Made by a program: the position numbers and the translations under genes
Assembly (NCBI GenBank): GCA_002269645.1
Contig: NIVC01002054.1
Coordinates: forward strand, 124,001 to 188,000
Direction of reading: 5' to 3'
DNA from: Macrostomum lignano
Lineage: Eukaryota
DNA length: 64,000 bases
Shown here: piece after piece, positions 17,824 through 56,176 of the stretch
How the letters are laid out: each line of letters starts with the position of its first letter
How positions within the stretch are numbered: the first letter of the stretch is position 1
The notes under the pieces: generated by a model
Seen by the model: the letters and a program-made list of their open reading frames with translations, nothing else
The model's database searches: none
What the model was told of the DNA's origin: nothing

Positions 17824-22764
<4,941 letters not shown>

Positions 22765-26400: not shown

Positions 26401-26764
26401 CGTCCGCCTTTTGCAAAAAATCTCTACTCTTAATTGGTGATCACGTTTGCTCATTTTCGGCGGCCACTAATTTTGAATTTTTGGAACAGCCATGGACCTT
26501 AATTTACTGAGGTGCATTCTGTTGCGCATAGATTCGAATGATGGTTTCTTGGCGATTTTTTATGAAAATTGTTTAAAGATCAAGAAGAGCTTTGTAATTA
26601 GCAAACAAGACCATCAAAGAGATAAAAAGTAAAATAATTTGTGCTTGAGCGTGCGTGCTGCCTCAGTCGCATTAAAAGTCAAAGCAAACGCATGCCCTGT
26701 GCACGCCACAGAACAAGGCAGAGAAGGTCGCTGAGGGTAACAGACAGACAGCTTTACTTGTGAA

Positions 26765-26850
26765 ACATACCGACAGACAGGCAGACAGACAGACAGACAG
26801 ACAGACAGGCAGGCAGACAGATAGACAGACAGACAGACAGGCAGGCAGAC

Positions 26851-26887
<37 letters not shown>

Positions 26888-26926
26888 GGCAGACATACAG
26901 ACAGGCAGGCAGACAGGCAGGCAGGC

Positions 26927-26963
<37 letters not shown>

Positions 26964-27370
26964 GGCAGACAGACAGACAGGCAGGCAGGCAGGCAGACAG
27001 ACAGACAGACAGACAGGCAGACATACAGACAGACAGACAGACAGGCAGGCAGGCAGACAGACAGACAGACAGACAGACAGGCAGACAGACAGGCAGACAG
27101 ACAGACAGGCAGGCAGGCAGGCAGGCAGACAGACAGACAGACAGACAGACAGACAGGCAGGCAGGAAGACAGACAGGCAGACAGACAGACAGACAGACAG
27201 ACAGACAGGCAGACAGACAGACAGACAGACAGACAGACAGGCAGACAGACAGGCAGACAGACAGACAGGCAGGCAGGCAGGCAGACAGACAGACAGACAG
27301 GCAGACAGACAGACAGACAGACAGGCAGACAGACAGGCAGACAGACAGACAGACAGACAGACAGACAGGC

Positions 27371-27403
<33 letters not shown>

Positions 27404-27856
27404 GGCAGGCAGGCAGGCAGACAGACAGACAGACAGACAGGCGGACATACAGACAGACAGACATACAGGCAGGCAGGCAGGCAGACAGACAGACAGACAG
27501 ACAGACAGACAGGCAGACAGACAGGCAGACAGACAGACAGACAGACAGACAGGCAGACAGACAGGCAGACAGACAGACAGGCAGGCAGGCAGGCAGGCAG
27601 ACAGACAGACAGACAGACAGGCAGGCAGGCAGACAGACAGACAGACAGGCAGGCAGACAGACAGACAGGCAGACAGACAGACAGACAGACAGACAGACAG
27701 GCAGACAGACAGGCAGACAGACAGACAGGCAGGCAGGCAGGCAGACAGACAGACAGACATACAGATAGACAGACAGACAGGCAGACAGACAGACTGACAG
27801 GCAGACAGGCAGACAGACAGATAGACAGACAGACAGGCAGACAGACACAGACAAGC

Positions 27857-27889
<33 letters not shown>

Positions 27890-28104
27890 GGCAGGCAGGC
27901 AGGCAGACAGACAGACAGACAGACAGGCAGACATACAGACAGACAGACAGACAGGCAGGCAGACAGACAGACAGACAGACAGGCAGACAGACAGGCAGAC
28001 AGACAGACAGGCAGGCAGGCAGGCAGGCAGACAGACAGACAGACAGGCAGACAGACAGACAGACAGACAGGCAGGCAGGCAGACAGACAGACAGACAGAC
28101 AGGC

Positions 28105-28137
<33 letters not shown>

Positions 28138-28224
28138 GGCAGACAGACAGACAGGCAGGCAGGCAGGCAGACAGACAGACAGACAGACAGGCAGACAGAC
28201 AGACAGACAGGCAGACAGACAGGC

Positions 28225-28265
<41 letters not shown>

Positions 28266-28380
28266 GGCAGGCAGGCAGGCAGACAGACAGACAGACAGAC
28301 AGGCAGACATACAGACAGACAGACATACAGGCAGGCAGGCAGGCAGACAGACAGACAGACAGACAGGCAGACAGACAGGC

Positions 28381-28413
<33 letters not shown>

Positions 28414-28582
28414 GGCAGACAGACAGGCAGACAGACAGACAGACAGGCAGGCAGGCAGGCAGGCAGACAGACAGACAGACAGACATACAGATAGACAGAC
28501 AGACAGGCAGACAGACAGACTGACAGGCAGACAGGCAGACAGACAGATAGACAGACAGACAGGCAGACAGACACAGACAAGC

Positions 28583-28635
<53 letters not shown>

Positions 28636-28638
28636 GGC

Positions 28639-28669
<31 letters not shown>

Positions 28670-28744
28670 TAGACAGACAGACTGACAGGCAGACAGGCAG
28701 ACAGACAGATAGACAGACAGACAGGCAGACAGACACAGACAAGC

Positions 28745-28801
<57 letters not shown>

Positions 28802-28812
28802 GGCAGACAGAC
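26765..28812. repeat. ~2-kb compound (GACA/GGCA)n microsatellite with higher-order duplications
   Basis: Direct reading; source of the 570-735-aa SVCL pseudo-ORFs. Confidence 0.97.
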
Positions 28813-29239
28813 TTGTTTTCAACAGCAATAAGGCCACAGTTGAGAAAGCAGTGTTTAAAAATTCATTACAGAATAGCAATCAATCACAGTTTCAATACTG
28901 GGTGGAAATGTAGGAATATTTTATTTTCTTAATAACCTCACAATATTGGTAGCAGGTTACCATCGCATGATTTTAAGCAACTAAAATGACGAAGAATACC
29001 ATTACAATTTAATCATTATAAGAATCAACATAAGAATAGAATAGAATAGAAATATAATTGATAATTATTTTAGAAAACAAAAAGTCATTTGTCTTTCAAG
29101 TGACCTTTGATTGTGGAATTGAGCAACAGAGGAAATGTAAAGTTGATATGAACTTATAACTTACAAAAATAGTAATCATAATCAAATATTCAGCAAAGAT
29201 GTTACGAATGAAGAATGAAAAAAAACTTCTTCACGAAAT

Positions 29240-46909: not shown

Positions 46910-49900
46910 TTAAGTCTCCATACCGTCTTCAAGATTGAGCACAAAAGTGACGGGTTTCATGCCACTCTGAGCACTGTCAGTAACATTTAGCACTGTATTA
47001 GAAAGCAGGCCTAATTCTGCCAGAGATTTGTCTAAATTGTCAGCTAATTGATCGCGCAGAAATGACAAGTCCATGTATAGGGTGACATCGCGACCTTCAA
47101 CGCAAGCGGTGAGGCTCGGCCGTGTCATACCGTGCTCCGACTTCAATTGGTTGATGACGGTCTGCAGCGAGTCCCGACTATTGAACGTCAGAGGCTTGGG
47201 CGGAGGCTGGCCGCACACGTCGCACTGGGGATTCCGCTCCAACGGCACAACATTCACGGCTACGCCTTCGATGTCGCTGAAGTTAGCGAAGTTGTTCAAC
47301 AGCGGGTAGCAGCCGGTGATGGCTTTGAATACTTCGGTGACGCACTGGGCGCTGATGACAGCGTTGGTGGATGCCACGGCTGGAATGATGTGCTTCACTA
47401 CGCCCTGAGTCAGCCGGAAATCCGGTTCCCGGATGCCGAATTGTCTGGCACGTTTGCAGGCCTCCGTGCGAATCCAGTCCACGTGGTGTGGGTCGTCTCC
47501 GTCTACGGGCACCTGGGGGTGGGCAATTTAGTGATCAGTGGGGTGGGGAATTTAGTGATCAGTGGGGTGGGCAATTTAGTGATCAGTGGGGTGGGGAATT
47601 TAGTGATCAGTGGGGTGGGCCAATTTGGTGATCAGTGGGGTGGGGAATTTAGTGATCAGTGGGGTGGGGAATTTAGTGATCAGTGGTGTGGGGAATTTAG
47701 TGATCAGTGGGGTGGGCAATTTAGTGATCAGTGGTGTGGGGAATTTAGTGATCAGTGGTGTGGGGAATTTAGTGATCAGTGGTGTGGGGAATTTAGTGAT
47801 CAGTGGTGTGGGGAATTTAGTGATCAGTGGTGTGGGGAATTTAGTGATCAGTGGTGTGGGGAATTTAGTGATCAGTGGTGTGGGGAATTTAGTGATCAGT
47901 GGTGTGGGGAATTTAGTGATCAGTGGGGTGGGCAATTTAGTGATCAGTGGTGTGGGGAATTTAGTGATCAGTGGTGTGGGGAATTTAGTGATCAGTGGTG
48001 TGGGGAATTTAGTGATCAGTGGGGTGGGCAATTTAGTGATCAGTGGGGTGGGGAATTTAGTGATCAGGTAGAGTGGGGGAATTTAGTGATCAGTGGGGTG
48101 GGCAATTTAGTGATCAGTGGTGTGGGGAATTTAGTGATCAGTGGTGTGGGGAATTTAGTGATCAGTGGTGTGGGGAATTTAGTGATCAGTGGTGTGGGGA
48201 ATTTAGTGATCAGTGGTGTAGGGAATTTAGTGATCAGTGGTGTGGGGAATTTAGTGATCAGTGGGGTGGGCAATTTAGTGATCAGTGGTGTGGGGAATTT
48301 AGTGATCAGTGGTGTGGGGAATTTAGTGATCAGTGGTGTGGGGAATTTAGTGATCAGTGGGGTGGGCAATTTAGTGATCAGTGGGGTGGGGAATTTAGTG
48401 ATCAGGTAGAGTGGGGGAATTTAGTGATCAGGTTGAGTGGGGAATTTAGTGATCAGGTTGAGTGGGGAATTTAGTTATCAGGTTGAGTGGGGAATTTAGT
48501 GATCAGATAGAGTGGGGAATTTAGAGTGATCGGTGAAGTGGGGAATTTAGAGTGATCAGGTTGAGTGGGGAATTTAGTTATCAGGTTGAGTGGGGAATTT
48601 AGTTATCAGATAGAGTGGGGAATTTAGAGTGATCGGTGAAGTGGGGAATTTAGAGTGATCGGTGAAGTGGGGAATTTAGAGTGATCGGTGAAGTGGGGAA
48701 TTTAGAGTGATCGGTGAAGTGGGGAATTTAGAGTGATCGGTGAAGTGGGGAATTTAGTGATCACATAGATTGAGGAGTTTGTTGAAAAAGAGTCGGGAAT
48801 CTAGAGAAACATAGTGGGGAAATTTAATGAGTTGATGAAGGGGTAATTTAGAGAGGTAAAGTGTGGAAATTCAGTGAAGTAGAGTAGGAAATGTAGTAAG
48901 TAAGCTACAGAGAAATTGAAGAGAGTTGAAATAGCTTAGTAATTTCATAATTGGAACGGGGTATTTAGAGTGCTGAAAATGCAGAGCTATTGTATTTAAT
49001 TTAATTTTCATTCCGTTTTCATTACCTCTTCGCCGAACGGCCACTCCTGGGGCCACTGCATAATCCTGGCGAACTCGATGCAGTGCTCTGGCAGCCGGGG
49101 AGTGTGGGCCAGAGTGCACAGAGGGAACCCCTGCTGGGTGCTGCTATAGAGGTCGGCTGTGCACTCCAGACACGGGGTGGCGTGGGCTCGAACCACCCGG
49201 CAGTGGCCCTGAAATCCTTGGGTGCCGCCGTCGATCAGGGGGATGACGCTGGTCGGAATGGGCTGATCAGACTCGTCAAATTGAACCAGGGAGCAGACTA
49301 TCTGGTTGAGGCGGCGCCTGCGGGGATTGAGATTCGGCTACTCTTGTACCTGGATACAGACAGACGGACAGGCAGACAGATAGACAGACAGACAGAAAGA
49401 CAGACAGACAGACAGAAGGACAGACACTCAAACAGACAGACACTCAGACAGACAGACAGACAGACAGACAGACAGGCAGGCAGACAGATAGACAGACAGA
49501 CAGAAGGACAGACAGACAGACAGTCCCGCTCGCACCTGGCCTGCACGCTGTCCAGGCCGCACACGATGCACATGAACTGCCTGTAGAACTCCAACGGTTT
49601 GTCCTCCAGTTTGCCAAAGTGCGGCGTCACCCGGCAGCCGGAGACGCGGCGTTCAACAAATTCGGCAGCAACGACGGCCTTCGGCCTGCCGATGTCTTTG
49701 GGGCGGAACAGAAACTGGCGATTCAGATTGGACAGATCGATGGTGTCCATGTCGATCAGATGCAGATTGACAAAGCCGCTCAGGGCGAGGTCTTTCAGCA
49801 TCTCGCAGCCGAGACCGCCAGCCCCGACAACCAATATCTGGACAAGATCTGAGCGAATCGCTGAGAATAGCTCAGGATCGGGTTCGAACTCAGGACCGCC

Positions 49901-49969
49901 CAAGGGCCCGGCCCGCTCTAATAGCCGACGCACGTGGCGCCAACGATTGTCTGTGCCCGGCGAGCTCTG
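46910..49969 (-). CDS. UBA3: NEDD8-activating enzyme E1 catalytic subunit. Exons: 49969(or 49966)-49536, 49317-49026, 47512-46910; no in-frame ATG precedes the conserved N-terminus
   Basis: [62 protein letters not shown], catalytic [45 protein letters not shown]. Splice phases are consistent; about 443 aa with an initiator Met. Confidence 0.95.
47515..48770. repeat. 24-bp minisatellite (gggaatttagtgatcagtggtgtg) in UBA3 intron 2
   Basis: About 50 copies abutting the acceptor at 47513-47514. Confidence 0.97.
49360..49522. repeat. (GACA)n in UBA3 intron 1
   Basis: Direct reading. Confidence 0.93.
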
Positions 49970-50335
49970 CTGTTGGAATAAATTCGTTTAGCGATTTTCA
50001 AAACTACTGCTACTAAAGATACTACTACCTTAATAATTGGGTAAAACTATTGGAAAACTACACGAGAAAACCACCGCATTGATTAAAAATCCAGGGCCTA
50101 AGCAAACTAGCACTAGAGTGTGTAGTATATGCTGCACAAGTATCGCACAATTCATCGATAAGAGCCAAGAATATAAGATAAGAATAAGTTTGCTGTCATG
50201 CCGTTGCAGCATTTGACCGATTTATATCCAAGCACCTGCGAAGTACTGCACTTGCTTTGCGTTTAACCAACTCTTCCAGAAACCCTAAGCAAGAAATCAA
50301 TTCTTTTTTTCTGAAAAAAAAAGCAATCCGAAACA

Positions 50336-51842
50336 ATGCGAGGCCTAATATTTCTAACCGCTGACAATTCTTTGAAGTTGAAGAACGATCTGCAAGATCC
50401 AAAGCCGAACAGCGAAGAGGTCGTAGTACGGGTTAGCCATTGCGGAGTATGCGGTACAGACCTGCACATCATGCAAGGTCACTTTCCCGTGGCTGTGGAG
50501 ACTCAACTAGTCCTGGGCCACGAGTTCACCGGCTGGCTGCAGGAAGCGAATACCGATAGCAAGAAAAATCAAGACGGAAACTTCGGCACTCCCGTGTTTG
50601 TCAATCCGAATGGTCGGTGCGGCTACTGCATCGGTTGCCAAGAGGTTTGTTTCACTTAGCAACACAGTGAAATAATAAATATTCGGACAAAAGCTGCGGG
50701 CACCCTGACGCAAGGTCTTCGGAGACATCGTCTCACAACCAGAGTTGACGGCAATTTTGTCCATTTCGCTGACTCCTAAGCACAAACAAGCGCACCAATA
50801 CTGTACGCAAGCACGCACTCACACACGCTCACACAGGGGTGGACAGCGGCCCTCTGACTTTCGAATCGTCAGGCACGACACCCACGGTGCGTTAAAAGCT
50901 GGCCCTCACTGGTGTGAATCGCACGACAACCACTCAACCAACTTGGTTGCACACGGAATCAAACCAGGGGTCGTTTTGCTAGAGTCAGACGGGTTTACCG
51001 CTGAGCTGCTCTGCCCCTAGCAACAGGCATTGCATAAACCAGCCTTAATGAATTTTTCCGTGAAAAAACACTCGATCAAAACACCCTATTAGGGCCGAGT
51101 GCACTTCTGCGGCTACCGAGCTATGGGTGCCGCTTCAGTGGGCGTCGGTCGAGACGGCGGCTGGGCGGAGTTCGTGGCGGTGCCAGCCAATCAGGTTCAC
51201 CGAATGCCTAAAGATCTGCCGATGTCAACTGGAATTCTGGTTGAGCCAATCAGCTGCGTGCTTCACGGCTACGATCGGCTGTTCACCGCTGGAGCAGCCA
51301 AGCAGCTGGACCCAACTGACTCTGTGCTCATTCTGGGTGCTGGCATCATCGGTCTGCTTTGGGCCTGCCTGCTGCACCAGCGTGGCTACCGGACCATTCA
51401 CATCAGCGACATTTCTCCGGAGCGACGCCAGGTCGTTACTAACATGAAATTAAACGGCATGTCGCCTAAACAACCAACCGAGCTGCTTAGCAACACCTAC
51501 CAGCTGATCGTGGACTGCACCGGAGTGCCAAAGGCGCTCGAGTCGGCCTATAAAAGCCTGTCTAGCGGTGGCATCCTGTGCGTGTTCGGATGCGCACCAG
51601 AGGGAGTCAAGCTGAACCTGCCGTATTATGACCTGGTCAACCGAGAGATCACCGTTGTGTTTTGTCGCGTTAATCCGTTCACAAGCGACCGAGCTATCGA
51701 CCTGACGCGTCGTTTACATCTGGACGGCTACCTGGACTTGGACCGGCTGGGCATTAAGGTATTCGGACTCGACCAGCATCAGCAAGCCTTTGAAATGCTG
51801 AACAATCGTCAGGCACCTAAGGTTGCCTTCCGGCTAAACTGA
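50336..51842 (+). CDS. Zn-dependent medium-chain (MDR) dehydrogenase, sorbitol/threonine-DH-like, copy 1; join(50336-50644,51093-51842), 352 aa
   Basis: CGVCGTDLH and LGHE catalytic-Zn motifs, CGYCIGC-x7-C structural Zn, GAGIIG NAD-binding motif, acidic residue in SDISPERR. Phase-0 GT-AG intron. Confidence 0.93.
50665..51017 (-). mobile_element. tRNA-derived SINE (353 bp) inserted in the intron of dehydrogenase copy 1
   Basis: Minus-strand head GGGGCAGAGCAGCTCAGCGG...GGTTTGATTCC; perfect TSD TAGCAACA at 50657-50664 and 51018-51025; body aligns by eye with the SINE at 13613-13977. Confidence 0.85.
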
Positions 51843-52510: not shown

Positions 52511-53644
52511 ATGCGCGGCCTAGTGTTTGTAACTAGCGACAGCTCACTACAGCTGCAGGATGATATTCAAGTGCCTAAGCCGACTTCTGAAGAGCTACTA
52601 GTACGGGTTAGCCACTGCGGTGTATGCGGAACAGACCTGCACATCATGCAGGGCCATTTCCCGGTGGCTGCTCGATCTACTCTCGTACTCGGACACGAGT
52701 TCACTGGCTGGCTAATTGATGGCGATGGAAGCCAGCCAAGTAAAGGCAAATCCAACACGCCTGTTTTTGTCAATCCGAACGGACAATGCGGCTACTGCAA
52801 CGAGTGCCAACGGGTAAAACTTTCATGGAAGCATTTAATTGACATTTGAAATGCACTACTGGATAGAAAGACAAGTTTTTGCATATCATTGCAGGGTCTG
52901 GTGCACTTCTGCCCCCAGCGTACCTTAGGCGCTGGAGCTGTAGGTCTGGCAAGAGACGGCGGCTGGGCGGAGTTCGTGGCGGTGCCAGCCAATCAGGTTC
53001 ACCGAATGCCTAAAGATCTGCCGGTGTCAACTGGAATTCTCGTTGAGCCAATCAGCTGCGTACTACACGGCTACGATCGGCTGTTCACCGCTGGAGCAGC
53101 CAAGCAGCTGGACCCAACTGACTCTGTGCTCATTCTGGGTGCTGGCATCATCGGCCTGCTCTGGGCCTGCCTGCTGCACCAGCGGGGCTACCGGACCATC
53201 CACATCAGCGACATCTCTCCGGAGCGACGCCAGGCTGTTGAAAACTTGAAACTTGACGGCGTGTTGCCTAGGCAACCAACCGAGCTGCTTAGCAACACCT
53301 ACCAGCTGATTGTGGATTGCACCGGAGTGCCAAAGGCGCTCGAGTCGGCCTATAAAAGCCTGTCTAGCGGTGGCATCCTGTGCGTGTTCGGATGCGCCCC
53401 GGAGGGAGTCAAGCTGAACCTGCCGTATTATGACCTGGTCAACCGAGAGATCACCGTTGTGTTTTGTCGCGTTAATCAGTTTGCTAGCGATCGAGCCATC
53501 GACCTGACGTACCAGCTGCACCGACAGGGTTACCTGGACTTCAACCGGTTGGGCATTCAAGTCTACCCACTCGATCAGCACCAAAAAGCATTCGAAACGT
53601 TAGGCAAGCGTCAGGCACCGAAGGTGGCCTTCCAACTGGGCTGA
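52511..53644 (+). CDS. Zn-dependent MDR dehydrogenase copy 2; join(52511-52813,52895-53644), 350 aa
   Basis: Same motifs and same intron position as copy 1; the intron is 81 nt. Confidence 0.93.
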
Positions 53645-54340: not shown

Positions 54341-56176
54341 TCAATCGAAAGCGGCTCTTTTACGCTTAGCTCCAACAATTAATTTTTGCACTTCAACAGC
54401 TTTGCTCGCCTCCGAATGAGTTGGATCCACGTGATAATTTGGATCGGTGAACAGCGCGCCAAATCGTTCGTCGGCTGCCACATCGGCTGCTGTCACTGCC
54501 GAGTGAGCACCTGCGACCCGGTCGGCAACTAGCATTGCCAACTCCTGCTCACTAGCCGGCATTTCTCCTTCGCCTTCGCCACTGTCACCTTCGTCACTAT
54601 CGCCGCTGCCGCCGGCTCCGTCAGCCTTAGAAGGCAGCAGGCCAGCTTTAGCCAGTTTAGCCCGTTTCGCTTGCTCCTTTAATCGGCGACGCCTCGTGCG
54701 CTTGCGAGATTCTTTCGGCTCCGATTGCTCCTGCTGCTTCTGGCCCTTGGCACTTGACTTGGCCTTAGCATCGACGTCCTGCATGGCTAAAGCGATATCG
54801 TCGGGCAGCTCGTCGTCTGAGAAGGTGGCCGGCAACTCGCTGCCATTGTCGGCGTTATCTTCGGCTTTGTCGGCTCCGACATCGTCTCCTAACAGCGCCC
54901 GACGAAGCTTCACCGTTCTGGCTTTGATGGCGTCACTGTCCTCTTCATCATTGTCGGATTCATCGCTACTCAAATTGAGAAACTCCGACAGTCTATTAAG
55001 ATCCGGATCGTCTTCGTTGAAATCGGTCTTGTTGAACAGGCCCTGCAGGTAGCGAGTTCGCTCAGTCGGTGTCTCGTCCCAGGTTAGGCCGACTTTTGTA
55101 CGGTTTAATAGACCAGCGGTTAGTTTGCGCGGCTTATAAGCAGCCGGGTCCAGACCCGTGCACCGCGTTACAAGATGACGCCACTCGTCTGGCACATCGT
55201 CCGGACCGCCGAACTCCATACCCGCCGGCACGTAGCTCAATCTAAGACACCCGCCGGTGCTTTCCACCTCTAGACCGGAGCACTGCTCATAGACACTGGT
55301 TGCGGCTGGAGTGCAATCAAACTCCGCTACAGCGTAATAGTACCACAATCGTTTTAGCTGGTAGCGTCGAAGACTTCGACGATAAGAGCCAGACGAAGTT
55401 GACGACTTCTTAGCCGGATCGGACGACGCTTTTCGGCGCAACTCCAACGGTCCCGCTTTGGCCTCTTCGGCCATTCGACGTTGACCGAATTTCGAGGGAT
55501 AAACTGTGACACTTAGCAAGCGACCAACAGACGATGGACAGTGACTGGAGAGCAGCATAAACAGATCGGTAGCTTTGATCTGCTCCCAGTCTTGCTGAGT
55601 AACAGCTAGTCGATTTGTTGGAACAACCGACTGGTCGTTTTCTTCATCAATCGCTGCGCTGGACGAGCGTTCGAGATTGCGAAACTCCTCGTCGCTGCTG
55701 CTTCTCGCTTCGCTGTCGCTGCCTTCTTCATCATTGTCTGCCTCATTTTGCTCATCATCATCATCATCCTCTTCATCTGAGTCGGATTCTTCCTCAGCTA
55801 CTTCTTCATCTTCTTCGTCTTCATCCTTATCCACAGCATCCTCACTCTCTTGATCTTCTTGGTTGTCAGAACTAGCTTCGACCTCATCATTATCATCCTC
55901 ATCCTCACCGTGACGACCCTGTTTCAATCCGTAGAACCTGCTCAGATCCTGTCGCGAGCTCATGGCCACTGGCCTGCCCCTCTTATCGCTGCGTACGCTG
56001 GTGGAGAACTCAGGATCTGTAAACATGGCGCCAAATCGATCGTCAATTTCAACGCGAGTTGCTTTGCGAGCCGAAGCCGATCGATAGCGCGGATCGGTGG
56101 TCACGTGACCGAAGCGCGGATCCGAGCGCCATTCTTCGTCGCGGTTGCCTGCTGCGTTGCGACGCTTCTTAACCAT
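54341..56176 (-). CDS. ESF1: Pre-rRNA-processing protein ESF1 homolog (NUC153 domain), 611 aa, intronless CDS
   Basis: DPRF...IDDRFGAMFTD...DKRGRP; RLAVTQQDWEQIKATDLFMLLSS; YPSKFGQRRMAEE...GP; LRRYQLKRLWYYYAVAEFD; C-terminal DERFGALFTDPNYHVDPT. Confidence 0.94.
   Translation of the reverse strand: MVKKRRNAAGNRDEEWRSDPRFGHVTTDPRYRSASARKATRVEIDDRFGAMFTDPEFSTSVRSDKRGRPVAMSSRQDLSRFYGLKQGRHGEDEDDNDEVEASSDNQEDQESEDAVDKDEDEEDEEVAEEESDSDEEDDDDDEQNEADNDEEGSDSEARSSSDEEFRNLERSSSAAIDEENDQSVVPTNRLAVTQQDWEQIKATDLFMLLSSHCPSSVGRLLSVTVYPSKFGQRRMAEEAKAGPLELRRKASSDPAKKSSTSSGSYRRSLRRYQLKRLWYYYAVAEFDCTPAATSVYEQCSGLEVESTGGCLRLSYVPAGMEFGGPDDVPDEWRHLVTRCTGLDPAAYKPRKLTAGLLNRTKVGLTWDETPTERTRYLQGLFNKTDFNEDDPDLNRLSEFLNLSSDESDNDEEDSDAIKARTVKLRRALLGDDVGADKAEDNADNGSELPATFSDDELPDDIALAMQDVDAKAKSSAKGQKQQEQSEPKESRKRTRRRRLKEQAKRAKLAKAGLLPSKADGAGGSGDSDEGDSGEGEGEMPASEQELAMLVADRVAGAHSAVTAADVAADERFGALFTDPNYHVDPTHSEASKAVEVQKLIVGAKRKRAAFD

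What the first reader, a model, noticed from the sequence alone, without database searches (positions are those of the whole stretch)
49933..50335. UBA3 has no start codon: conserved coding sequence begins at an in-frame 3' splice acceptor (candidate spliced-leader-donated AUG)
Seen: the UBA3 frame ([18 protein letters not shown], matching the conserved RWNHVKKFLE) opens directly after tttattccaacag| at 49969, or cag| at 49966, both phase 0. An in-frame TAA lies a few codons upstream. The first in-frame ATG is deep inside the adenylation domain (GCEM). Only 366 bp separate this point from the ATG of the divergent dehydrogenase gene. The four upstream minus-strand ATGs lack a strong phase-0 donor, and the best-looking donor (aag|gtagta near 50029) has an in-frame stop and no ATG. 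Established: flatworm spliced leaders end in AUG, and that AUG has been shown to initiate translation in Schistosoma. Inference: SL trans-splicing supplies the Met, giving MQSSPG... or MSSPG..., so expression of a neddylation enzyme would depend on trans-splicing.
Basis: partly seen in the sequence, partly recalled or inferred. Interest (0 to 1): 0.72.

Follow-up and report, generated by a model that had tools for sequence, protein, structure and literature searches.

The report
Flatworm UBA3 gene lacking its own ATG
In the flatworm Macrostomum lignano, the gene for the NEDD8-activating enzyme UBA3 has no usable start codon next to its coding sequence and most likely takes its AUG from the trans-spliced leader, a mechanism already known in flatworms.

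Summary
The window is Macrostomum lignano (assembly Mlig_3_7, contig NIVC01002054.1). UBA3 lies on the minus strand. Its reading frame opens 6 codons after a TAA, directly behind a tandem acceptor ttccaacag|cag| (first exon base 49969 or 49966). The first in-frame genomic ATG (49801, residue 58) lies after the GxGxxG nucleotide-binding loop. Two other genome copies are identical here, so this is not an assembly error.

The species' 35-nt spliced leader ends in ATG. Of 27 AG sites from the dehydrogenase ATG into the start of exon 1, only these two give a full ORF when joined to it (443 or 442 aa). Public models of the other copies are 5'-partial and start at these acceptors. UBA3 is also annotated as a downstream gene in a transcriptional unit shared with ESF1.

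The public model for this copy (PAA61255.1) has a start: a 21-nt mini-exon (52657-52637), antisense inside a dehydrogenase coding exon, spliced to 49966. It looks like a minor isoform or an ORF-calling by-product.

No read joining the leader to UBA3 could be examined. Leader-donated AUGs are established in Schistosoma, so this is a likely new member of a known kind, of modest interest.

The parts
49967..49972 (-). Tandem (NAGNAG-type) 3' splice acceptor cag|cag|. The exon starts at 49969 (giving M-QSSPG) or at 49966 (giving M-SSPG). This is the proposed trans-splice site.
   Evidence: Sequence. The annotated 5'-partial CDS of copy L002 starts at the base equivalent to 49969. UniProt models and the cis-spliced model PAA61255.1 use 49966. 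Only these two of 27 AG sites give a full ORF with the leader ATG.
49973..49995 (-). Moderately pyrimidine-rich stretch (tttattcc) and a branch-point-like ctaaac upstream of the acceptor. It contains the in-frame stop TAA at 49990-49988.
   Evidence: Sequence. 9 of the 15 bases before the AG are pyrimidines. The splicing role is inferred, not tested.
49970..50335 (-). Putative outron, which is also the shared intergenic region with the divergent dehydrogenase gene. It holds four minus-strand ATGs (50212, 50199, 50155, 50079) that would act as upstream ORFs on an untrimmed mRNA.
   Evidence: About 99% identical in three genome copies.
49536..49969 (-). UBA3 coding exon 1 (QSSPG...SVQA, ending in phase 2). 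It holds the GxGxxG loop, the first in-frame ATG at 49801-49799 and an in-frame GTG at 49933-49931.
   Evidence: Alignment to human UBA3.
49026..49317 (-). UBA3 coding exon 2, which includes the catalytic-cysteine motif [18 protein letters not shown].
46910..47512 (-). UBA3 coding exon 3, ending in the stop codon at 46912-46910.
52637..52657 (-). The 21-nt mini-exon coding part ATGGCCCTGCATGATGTGCAG (MALHDVQ) used by the public model PAA61255.1. Its donor is CAG|GTCTGT. It lies antisense inside exon 1 of the distal dehydrogenase gene.
   Evidence: The gene start in the annotation table maps to 52657. Sequence. Exact-sequence look-up of MALHDVQ+SSPG... returns PAA61255.1. The ATG is the reverse complement of the His codon CAT of ...MQGHF...; the proximal paralogue has CAC, giving GTG.
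54341..56176 (-). ESF1-like gene (611 aa, single exon), the upstream same-strand neighbour. In the other two copies it carries the same transcriptional-unit prefix as UBA3.
50336..51842 (+). Proximal Zn-dependent alcohol/sorbitol-dehydrogenase-like gene, divergent from UBA3. The distal tandem copy is at 52511-53644.

Best explanation
UBA3 of Macrostomum lignano is made from a pre-mRNA whose 5' part (the outron) is removed by spliced-leader trans-splicing at the tandem acceptor cag|cag| (first exon base 49969 or 49966).

The 35-nt leader ends in AUG, and that AUG falls in phase 0 with the UBA3 frame. The mature mRNA therefore reads ...UUAUUGCAUG|CAGAGC... or ...GCAUG|AGCUCG..., and translation starts at the leader's AUG. 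This gives [11 protein letters not shown]... (443 aa) or [10 protein letters not shown]... (442 aa).

The genome supplies no start codon next to the coding sequence, so a full-length enzyme depends on trans-splicing.

The pre-mRNA is probably part of a multi-gene transcriptional unit that also contains ESF1. A cryptic donor in the outron (52637|52636) may occasionally be cis-spliced to the same acceptor. That would give the annotated MALHDVQ isoform.

Shown here:
- the sequence anatomy;
- the frame arithmetic;
- identity across three genome copies;
- the state of the public gene models;
- the leader sequence (from the literature).

Inferred:
- that the leader is actually joined at this site;
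- that its AUG is the one used;
- that the cis isoform is minor.
For: 1. **Species and leader.** The contig is NIVC01002054.1 of M. lignano Mlig_3_7. The leader is CGGTCTCTTACTGCGAAGACTCAATTTATTGCATG. About 30% of genes are trans-spliced, with enrichment among conserved genes (PMC8629364; PMC5173321).
2. **Frame.** Of the 27 AG sites from the dehydrogenase ATG into the start of exon 1, only 49969 and 49966 give a long ORF when joined to ATG (443 and 442 aa). All others stop within 45 codons.
3. **No usable genomic ATG nearby.** TAA lies 6 codons upstream. The first ATG is residue 58, after the GxGxxG loop and inside Pfam ThiF (residues 45-341). Homology to human UBA3 starts at residue 8.
4. 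**Public models.** PAA82304.1 (442 aa, 'partial') begins with the first base after ttccaacag|. PAA55670.1 is also 'partial'. Three UniProt models begin SSPG without Met. A 5'-partial ORF that adds not even the next upstream CAG codon means the transcript model ends within 2 nt of the acceptor.
5. **Annotation method.** Leader sequences were trimmed, and transcriptional units were cut at peaks of leader-containing reads and at poly(A) sites (PMC5730564). ESF1 and UBA3 are g1/g2 of Mlig006702 and g2/g3 of Mlig002698.
6. **Not an assembly error.** Three contigs are identical at the site.
7. **Precedent.** All reported flatworm leaders end in AUG. In Schistosoma mansoni this AUG is in frame in 28% of trans-spliced cDNAs and is required by more than 40 (Cheng et al. 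2006, as cited in PMC9851317, and PMC12582326). The authors of the Macrostomum genome paper call the leader's final ATG the likely translation start codon (PMC10468722).
Against: - No read, cDNA or protein joining the leader to this exon was seen. Exact look-ups of M+QSSPG... and M+SSPG... were not in the protein collection. Homology searches returned nothing from this species. Supplementary tables did not list the gene.
- The acceptor does not fit the enriched trans-splice motif [T/C]TNCAG beyond its CAG.
- The public model for this very copy has a cis-spliced ATG exon, which implies some transcript support for a cis junction at 49966.
- The third copy's model starts 12 nt inside the exon, not at an AG.
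- Reading the transcriptional-unit prefix as evidence of a polycistronic precursor relies on the authors' naming scheme, not on data I could inspect.
Confidence: 0.75

Rival explanations
1. The public annotation is right. UBA3 starts at the genomic ATG at 52657 in a 21-nt coding mini-exon, which is cis-spliced (CAG|GTCTGT ... cag|AGC) across the proximal dehydrogenase gene to 49966. This gives MALHDVQSSPG... (448 aa). No leader AUG is needed.
For: - The exact protein is PAA61255.1 / A0A267EIB2, and its gene start maps to 52657.
- The junction is a canonical GT-AG in phase 0, with an in-frame stop upstream at 52714.
- It has the joint-best donor score among the 101 ATG-plus-phase-0-GT combinations found upstream.
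- Parasitic flatworms share acceptors between cis- and trans-splicing (PMC12582326).
Against: - The identical mini-exon sequence is present at the distal dehydrogenase copy of all three loci, yet only one of three models uses it. The other two are 5'-partial.
- The ATG is the reverse complement of a synonymous His codon (CAT) in the dehydrogenase. The paralogue has CAC. Its presence is therefore explained by the other gene's coding sequence.
- The donor GTCTGT departs from the species consensus GT[G/A]AG.
- 101 such ATG-donor combinations exist by chance in the 4.4 kb.
- 25 minus-strand ATGs lie between the ESF1 stop and 52657, 8 of them within 500 nt. On a long first exon this ATG would not be the first AUG.
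- MALHDVQ matches nothing in UBA3 homologues.
Confidence: 0.12
2. Another upstream coding or non-coding exon, not annotated and not found here, is cis-spliced to the acceptor and carries the real ATG. It could lie further upstream in the transcriptional unit.
For: - The acceptor is a good cis-type CAG.
- Only sequence-based enumeration was possible.
- The locus sits in a long transcriptional unit.
Against: - Five of the six models of this gene retrieved here (from two annotation sources) show no upstream exon; the sixth is the mini-exon model PAA61255.1.
- No candidate with a consensus donor was found in the 4.4 kb up to ESF1.
Confidence: 0.06
3. Translation starts on a non-trans-spliced mRNA at a non-AUG codon (GTG 49933, or a near-cognate codon just after the TAA) or at the internal ATG 49801.
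For: An in-frame GTG at 49933 and the ATG at 49801 both exist.
Against: - A GTG start would delete the conserved RW.H segment that aligns to human UBA3.
- An ATG 49801 start would delete the GxGxxG loop and the first part of the ThiF domain.
- An untrimmed leader region carries four upstream ATGs.
Confidence: 0.05
4. The copy is a decaying duplicate (pseudogene) that has lost its ATG.
For: M. lignano is a hidden polyploid with many duplicated genes (PMC8629364; PMC10468722).
Against: - All three copies keep intact 441-442-codon frames, canonical introns and every catalytic motif. They differ by only a few conservative residues.
- None of the three has an ATG, so no 'intact' copy is on record.
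Confidence: 0.02

Closest known systems
Schistosoma mansoni mRNAs that need the spliced leader's 3'-terminal AUG as initiator (Cheng, Cohen, Ndegwa & Davis, J Biol Chem 2006; known here only through citations in PMC9851317, PMC12582326 and PMC5832876)
   Same: A flatworm leader ending in AUG is joined in frame to an exon that has no start codon of its own. The conserved protein begins a few residues after the junction.
   Different: The species is a free-living macrostomorphan with its own leader sequence. No cDNA, reporter or translation experiment exists for this gene, whereas the Schistosoma cases were shown experimentally.
M. lignano trans-spliced genes cut out of multi-gene transcriptional units (Wudarski et al. 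2017, PMC5730564; Ustyantsev & Berezikov 2021, PMC8629364)
   Same: Same genome and same 35-nt leader. UBA3 shares a unit prefix with ESF1 and is a conserved housekeeping-type gene, the class enriched for trans-splicing.
   Different: UBA3 lies 4.4 kb downstream of ESF1, with two opposite-strand dehydrogenase genes in between. It would therefore not count as an operon member under the 2021 paper's rule of under 1 kb with no interruption by opposite-strand genes. Those papers do not discuss use of the leader AUG.
slORFs: reading frames created by leader addition (slORFfinder, PMC9851317)
   Same: The start codon is supplied by the leader and is invisible to genome-only annotation.
   Different: Most slORFs described there use near-cognate NUG codons in nematode, Oikopleura and trypanosome leaders, and often alter an existing ORF. 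Here a true AUG completes the only functional ORF.
NAGNAG tandem acceptors
   Same: Two AGs lie 3 nt apart (cagcag), and both are represented in public models. The products differ by one residue (Q).
   Different: Here the acceptor would be used in trans. The relative use of the two AGs is unknown.

Membership tests
Flatworm genes whose initiator Met comes from the spliced leader | The organism has a spliced leader ending in AUG | tested here: met
   Species identified as M. lignano. The leader ...TTATTGCATG is reported in PMC8629364 and PMC5173321. No leader gene lies in the window itself.
Flatworm genes whose initiator Met comes from the spliced leader | The mRNA is trans-spliced at the acceptor that opens the coding exon | tested here: inconclusive
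   Only indirect evidence. 5'-partial public models start at the two AGs. The gene was cut from a transcriptional unit by a pipeline that uses leader-read peaks. No junction read was seen.
Flatworm genes whose initiator Met comes from the spliced leader | The leader AUG is in frame with the conserved ORF, with no stop between | tested here: met
   Joining ATG to 49969 or 49966 gives 443 or 442 aa. The other 25 AG sites give 45 aa or fewer.
Flatworm genes whose initiator Met comes from the spliced leader | No genomic in-frame AUG can give a functional protein | tested here: inconclusive
   None lies in the contiguous frame (TAA at 49990; first ATG at residue 58, after GxGxxG). However, an annotated cis-spliced ATG mini-exon exists at 52657. 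I judge it incidental.
Flatworm genes whose initiator Met comes from the spliced leader | Translation actually initiates at the leader AUG | not testable with these tools
   Needs ribosome profiling, N-terminal proteomics or a reporter assay.
UBA3 / NEDD8-activating enzyme E1 catalytic subunit | ThiF adenylation domain with a GxGxxG loop, a catalytic cysteine motif and a C-terminal E2-binding ubiquitin-fold domain, with full-length similarity to UBA3 | tested here: met
   Pfam ThiF (5.9e-53) and E2_bind. Human UBA3 structures (1YOV_B, 3GZN_B, 1TT5_B) align over residues 8-423 at E = 4e-143, including [18 protein letters not shown] against [18 protein letters not shown]. Best database hits are UBA3 of many animals at 55-61% identity.

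The most novel reading that the evidence does not exclude
UBA3 in M. lignano has lost its genomic start codon altogether, unlike the two parasitic-flatworm orthologous loci examined here, which keep a genomic ATG. Neddylation capacity would then be strictly gated by trans-splicing. In addition, the same acceptor is contested by a cryptic cis donor whose ATG is embedded antisense in a neighbouring gene's coding exon. This would give two alternative N-termini, chosen by trans- versus cis-splicing competition.
Probability: 0.1. Interest if true: 0.5.

Novelty: new member of a known kind. Interest (0 to 1): 0.3.

Why it matters
**Annotation.** Genome-only and leader-trimmed pipelines label such genes 'partial', or give them invented N-termini such as MALHDVQ in PAA61255.1. 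Counting the leader's AUG would turn these into complete proteins. This matters for proteomics databases and for transgene and knock-in design in M. lignano, the flatworm in which transgenesis works.

**Biology.** An essential conserved enzyme would be translatable only after trans-splicing. That adds a concrete case from a free-living flatworm to a mechanism shown so far in Schistosoma. It also fits the reported enrichment of trans-splicing among conserved and stem-cell genes. It does not open a new kind of mechanism.

Tried and rejected
**Searches that found nothing**
- *Transcript-derived proteins.* A homology search with exons 1-2 returned only other species at 61% identity or less. A search with the N-terminal 49 aa returned nothing. 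This was despite the M. lignano cluster being in the collection, so the index does not expose it.
- *Exact look-ups.* M+QSSPG..., M+SSPG..., the after-stop TNLFQQ... version, the GTG-start and internal-ATG versions were all absent. Only MALHDVQ+SSPG... was found.
- *Supplementary tables.* Those of PMC5816591, PMC5173321 and PMC5730564 were searched for the gene identifiers and for UBA3, with no hits. A full-text search for the identifiers also found nothing.
- *Metagenome scan.* The leader-UBA3 junction pattern gave 0 matches.
- *RNA families and leader copies.* An Rfam scan of the window gave no hits. There is no leader copy in the window.
- *Papers not held.* The 2006 J Biol Chem paper was not held, and my look-up of the 2015 PNAS genome paper by a PMC id recalled from memory found nothing. 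Their content is cited only second-hand or left out.

**Ideas considered and rejected**
- *The 448-aa annotated product is the frame read from just after the TAA.* That version is also exactly 448 aa, but the exact look-up rejected it.
- *Loss of the genomic ATG is shared across flatworms, suggested by the truncated Clonorchis and Cichlidogyrus models.* Both loci have a genomic ATG in an unannotated first exon.
- *The cis junction is a mapping artefact of leader-containing reads.* The leader tail plus CAG shares only TGCAG with the mini-exon end. By my own reasoning that is too short to create a junction. This was not tested.

Full report
**What the window is.** An exact look-up of the 611-aa single-exon ORF at 54341-56176 (minus strand) places the window on contig NIVC01002054.1 of GCA_002269645.1. 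The proteins found there are named Macrostomum lignano, a free-living flatworm. The window has about 47% G+C (mean of the 32 windows) and is full of micro- and minisatellites that create long spurious ORFs. Rfam finds no RNA gene in it.

**Check of the observation.**
- UBA3 lies on the minus strand in three coding exons: 49969/49966-49536, 49317-49026 and 47512-46910. The introns are canonical GT-AG.
- The frame reads TAA (49990-49988) TNLFQQ|[18 protein letters not shown]... The sequence ttccaacag|cag|agc offers two acceptors 3 nt apart, both in phase 0.
- The next in-frame ATG is at 49801. That is residue 58, directly after the GxGxxG loop G50-G55 and inside the Pfam ThiF match (residues 45-341).
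- Human UBA3 crystal-structure sequences align from residue 8 to residue 423 at E = 4e-143, including the catalytic-cysteine motif. The conserved protein therefore begins almost at the acceptor.
- The 366 bp up to the ATG of the divergent dehydrogenase gene (50336, + strand) contain four minus-strand ATGs. Each runs into a stop, and none has a convincing phase-0 donor.
- Two further contigs of the same assembly (loci L002 and L003) show the same gene order: kinase, ESF1, dehydrogenase(s) on the opposite strand, UBA3, HPS5. They are about 99% identical over this region, with the same TAA, the same cagcag and no ATG. An assembly error is excluded.

**What the public record says.** The annotation table for this contig shows a 448-aa ThiF/E2_bind product whose gene starts at window position 52657, not at 49969.
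- At 52657 the minus strand reads ATG GCC CTG CAT GAT GTG CAG|gtctgt.
- An exact-sequence look-up shows that MALHDVQ + SSPGTDNRW... is PAA61255.1 (BOX15_Mlig029981g3, UniProt A0A267EIB2). The deposited model therefore has a start codon, in a 21-nt coding mini-exon cis-spliced over 2.7 kb to the second acceptor (49966).
- The same 90%-identity cluster holds the other copies. PAA82304.1 (442 aa, 'partial') starts QSSPG. PAA55670.1 (438 aa, 'partial') starts GTDNRW. Three UniProt models start SSPG. None has a Met.
- In L002 the partial CDS starts at exactly the first base after ttccaacag|. A 5'-partial ORF would have been extended by the next CAG codon if the transcript model reached 3 nt further. 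That model therefore ends within 2 nt of the acceptor.

**Why the leader is the likely source of the AUG.**
- M. lignano has one 35-nt spliced leader, CGGTCTCTTACTGCGAAGACTCAATTTATTGCATG. It is found on about 30% of genes, preferentially conserved ones (PMC8629364; the same 3' end is given in PMC5173321).
- I joined ATG to the base after each of the 27 AG dinucleotides from the dehydrogenase ATG into the start of exon 1. Only 49969 and 49966 gave the full protein (443 and 442 aa). All others terminated within 45 codons.
- The authors of the assembly trimmed leader sequences from transcripts. They then cut 'transcriptional units' into genes at peaks of leader-containing reads and at poly(A) sites (PMC5730564; supplementary legend).
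- ESF1 and UBA3 are g1/g2 of unit Mlig006702 and g2/g3 of unit Mlig002698. UBA3 is thus annotated as a downstream gene of a multi-gene precursor. That is the class of gene whose 5' end is defined by trans-splicing.
- Leader trimming plus ORF calling on the trimmed transcript explains why these models are flagged 'partial'.

**Why the mini-exon start is probably not the working start.**
- The 21 nt and their donor are identical at the distal dehydrogenase copy in all three loci, but only one of the three models uses them.
- The ATG is the reverse complement of the His codon CAT in the dehydrogenase motif ...LHIMQGHF... The proximal paralogue uses CAC, which gives GTG on the UBA3 strand. The ATG is accounted for by a synonymous codon choice in another gene.
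- The donor GTCTGT departs from the species' GT[G/A]AG consensus.
- The 4.4 kb between ESF1 and UBA3 offer 101 ATG-plus-phase-0-GT combinations by chance.
- Twenty-five minus-strand ATGs precede 52657 downstream of ESF1, 8 of them within 500 nt.
- The seven residues resemble nothing in other UBA3 proteins.
- A cis junction in a deposited model still suggests that some precursor molecules are cis-spliced from this cryptic donor to the trans-splice acceptor. Sharing of acceptors between cis- and trans-splicing is reported in parasitic flatworms (PMC12582326). I treat it as a minor isoform, or as a by-product of cutting the unit at the ESF1 poly(A) site instead of at the leader site.

**Comparison with other flatworms.** The deposited Clonorchis sinensis and Cichlidogyrus casuarinus UBA3 models start at an internal Met just before the GxGxxG loop, which at first suggested the same situation. 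Reading their loci shows an unannotated first exon with a genomic ATG in each: *MTEINWMQKWRSVRCILEREGPF...|gtgggt and MLNMISPDKEQWHGINCLLERSGPL...|gtaagt. Deposited Schistosoma japonicum and Protopolystoma proteins also begin with Met before the conserved W. Among the flatworms sampled, absence of a genomic ATG is therefore particular to Macrostomum.

**What is known already.**
- Cheng et al. 2006 reported that the Schistosoma mansoni leader AUG is in frame in 28% of trans-spliced cDNAs and is required by more than 40 (as summarised in PMC9851317; also PMC5832876).
- The mechanism is thus established. Its application to M. lignano UBA3 is new only as a specific case and as an annotation correction.

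**Limits.**
- No leader-UBA3 junction read, cDNA or peptide could be inspected with these tools.
- The acceptor matches the enriched trans-splice motif [T/C]TNCAG only in its CAG.
- The third copy's model starts 12 nt inside the exon for unknown reasons.
- Whether UBA3 is transcribed from the ESF1 unit or from the 366-bp bidirectional region is not resolved.

**Verdict.**
It is only partly supported, because direct evidence is missing and a cis-spliced ATG exon is on record.
- Novelty: new member of a known kind.
- Interest: 0.3.

Noticed in passing
window 50336-51842 and 52511-53644 (+ strand): Tandem pair of Zn-dependent alcohol/sorbitol-dehydrogenase-like genes (Pfam ADH_N, ADH_zinc_N, Glu_dehyd_C), divergent from UBA3. 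They lie antisense within the ESF1-UBA3 transcriptional unit.
   Followed up: partly
window 49356-49523 and 47519-48763: UBA3 intron 1 is largely an (ACAG)42 microsatellite. Intron 2 holds a 24-nt minisatellite of about 51 copies. Similar arrays across the window produce spurious ORFs of up to 735 aa (for example 26614-28879).
   Followed up: partly
L004 5857-5958 (Clonorchis sinensis DF142907.1) and L005 5865-5972 (Cichlidogyrus casuarinus JBJKFK010002354.1): The deposited UBA3 models of both parasites start at an internal Met. A first exon with a genomic ATG and the conserved W...ER.GP segment lies just upstream, followed by a GT donor, and is not annotated.
   Followed up: yes
L002 1940-3625, compared with window 54341-56176 and L003 1787-3619: The ESF1-like gene is 561 aa in one genome copy and 611 or 610 aa in the other two, a length difference of about 50 aa between near-identical copies.
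   Followed up: no
L003 8001 (equivalent to window 49957): The third UBA3 copy (PAA55670.1) is annotated 'partial' from GGC (GTDNRW), 12 nt inside the exon and not at an AG. The reason is unknown.
   Followed up: no
window 20390-21394 (+ strand): ORF with the C-terminal half of a rhodopsin-type 7TM receptor (Pfam 7tm_1, 1e-15), running into a tandem repeat of about 27 aa (...[27 protein letters not shown]...).
   Followed up: no
protein search tools: The word-indexed homology search never returned the M. lignano UBA3 cluster, even for an identical 49-aa query, although exact look-up shows the cluster is in the collection. Negative results from that search for this species carry no weight.
   Followed up: partly
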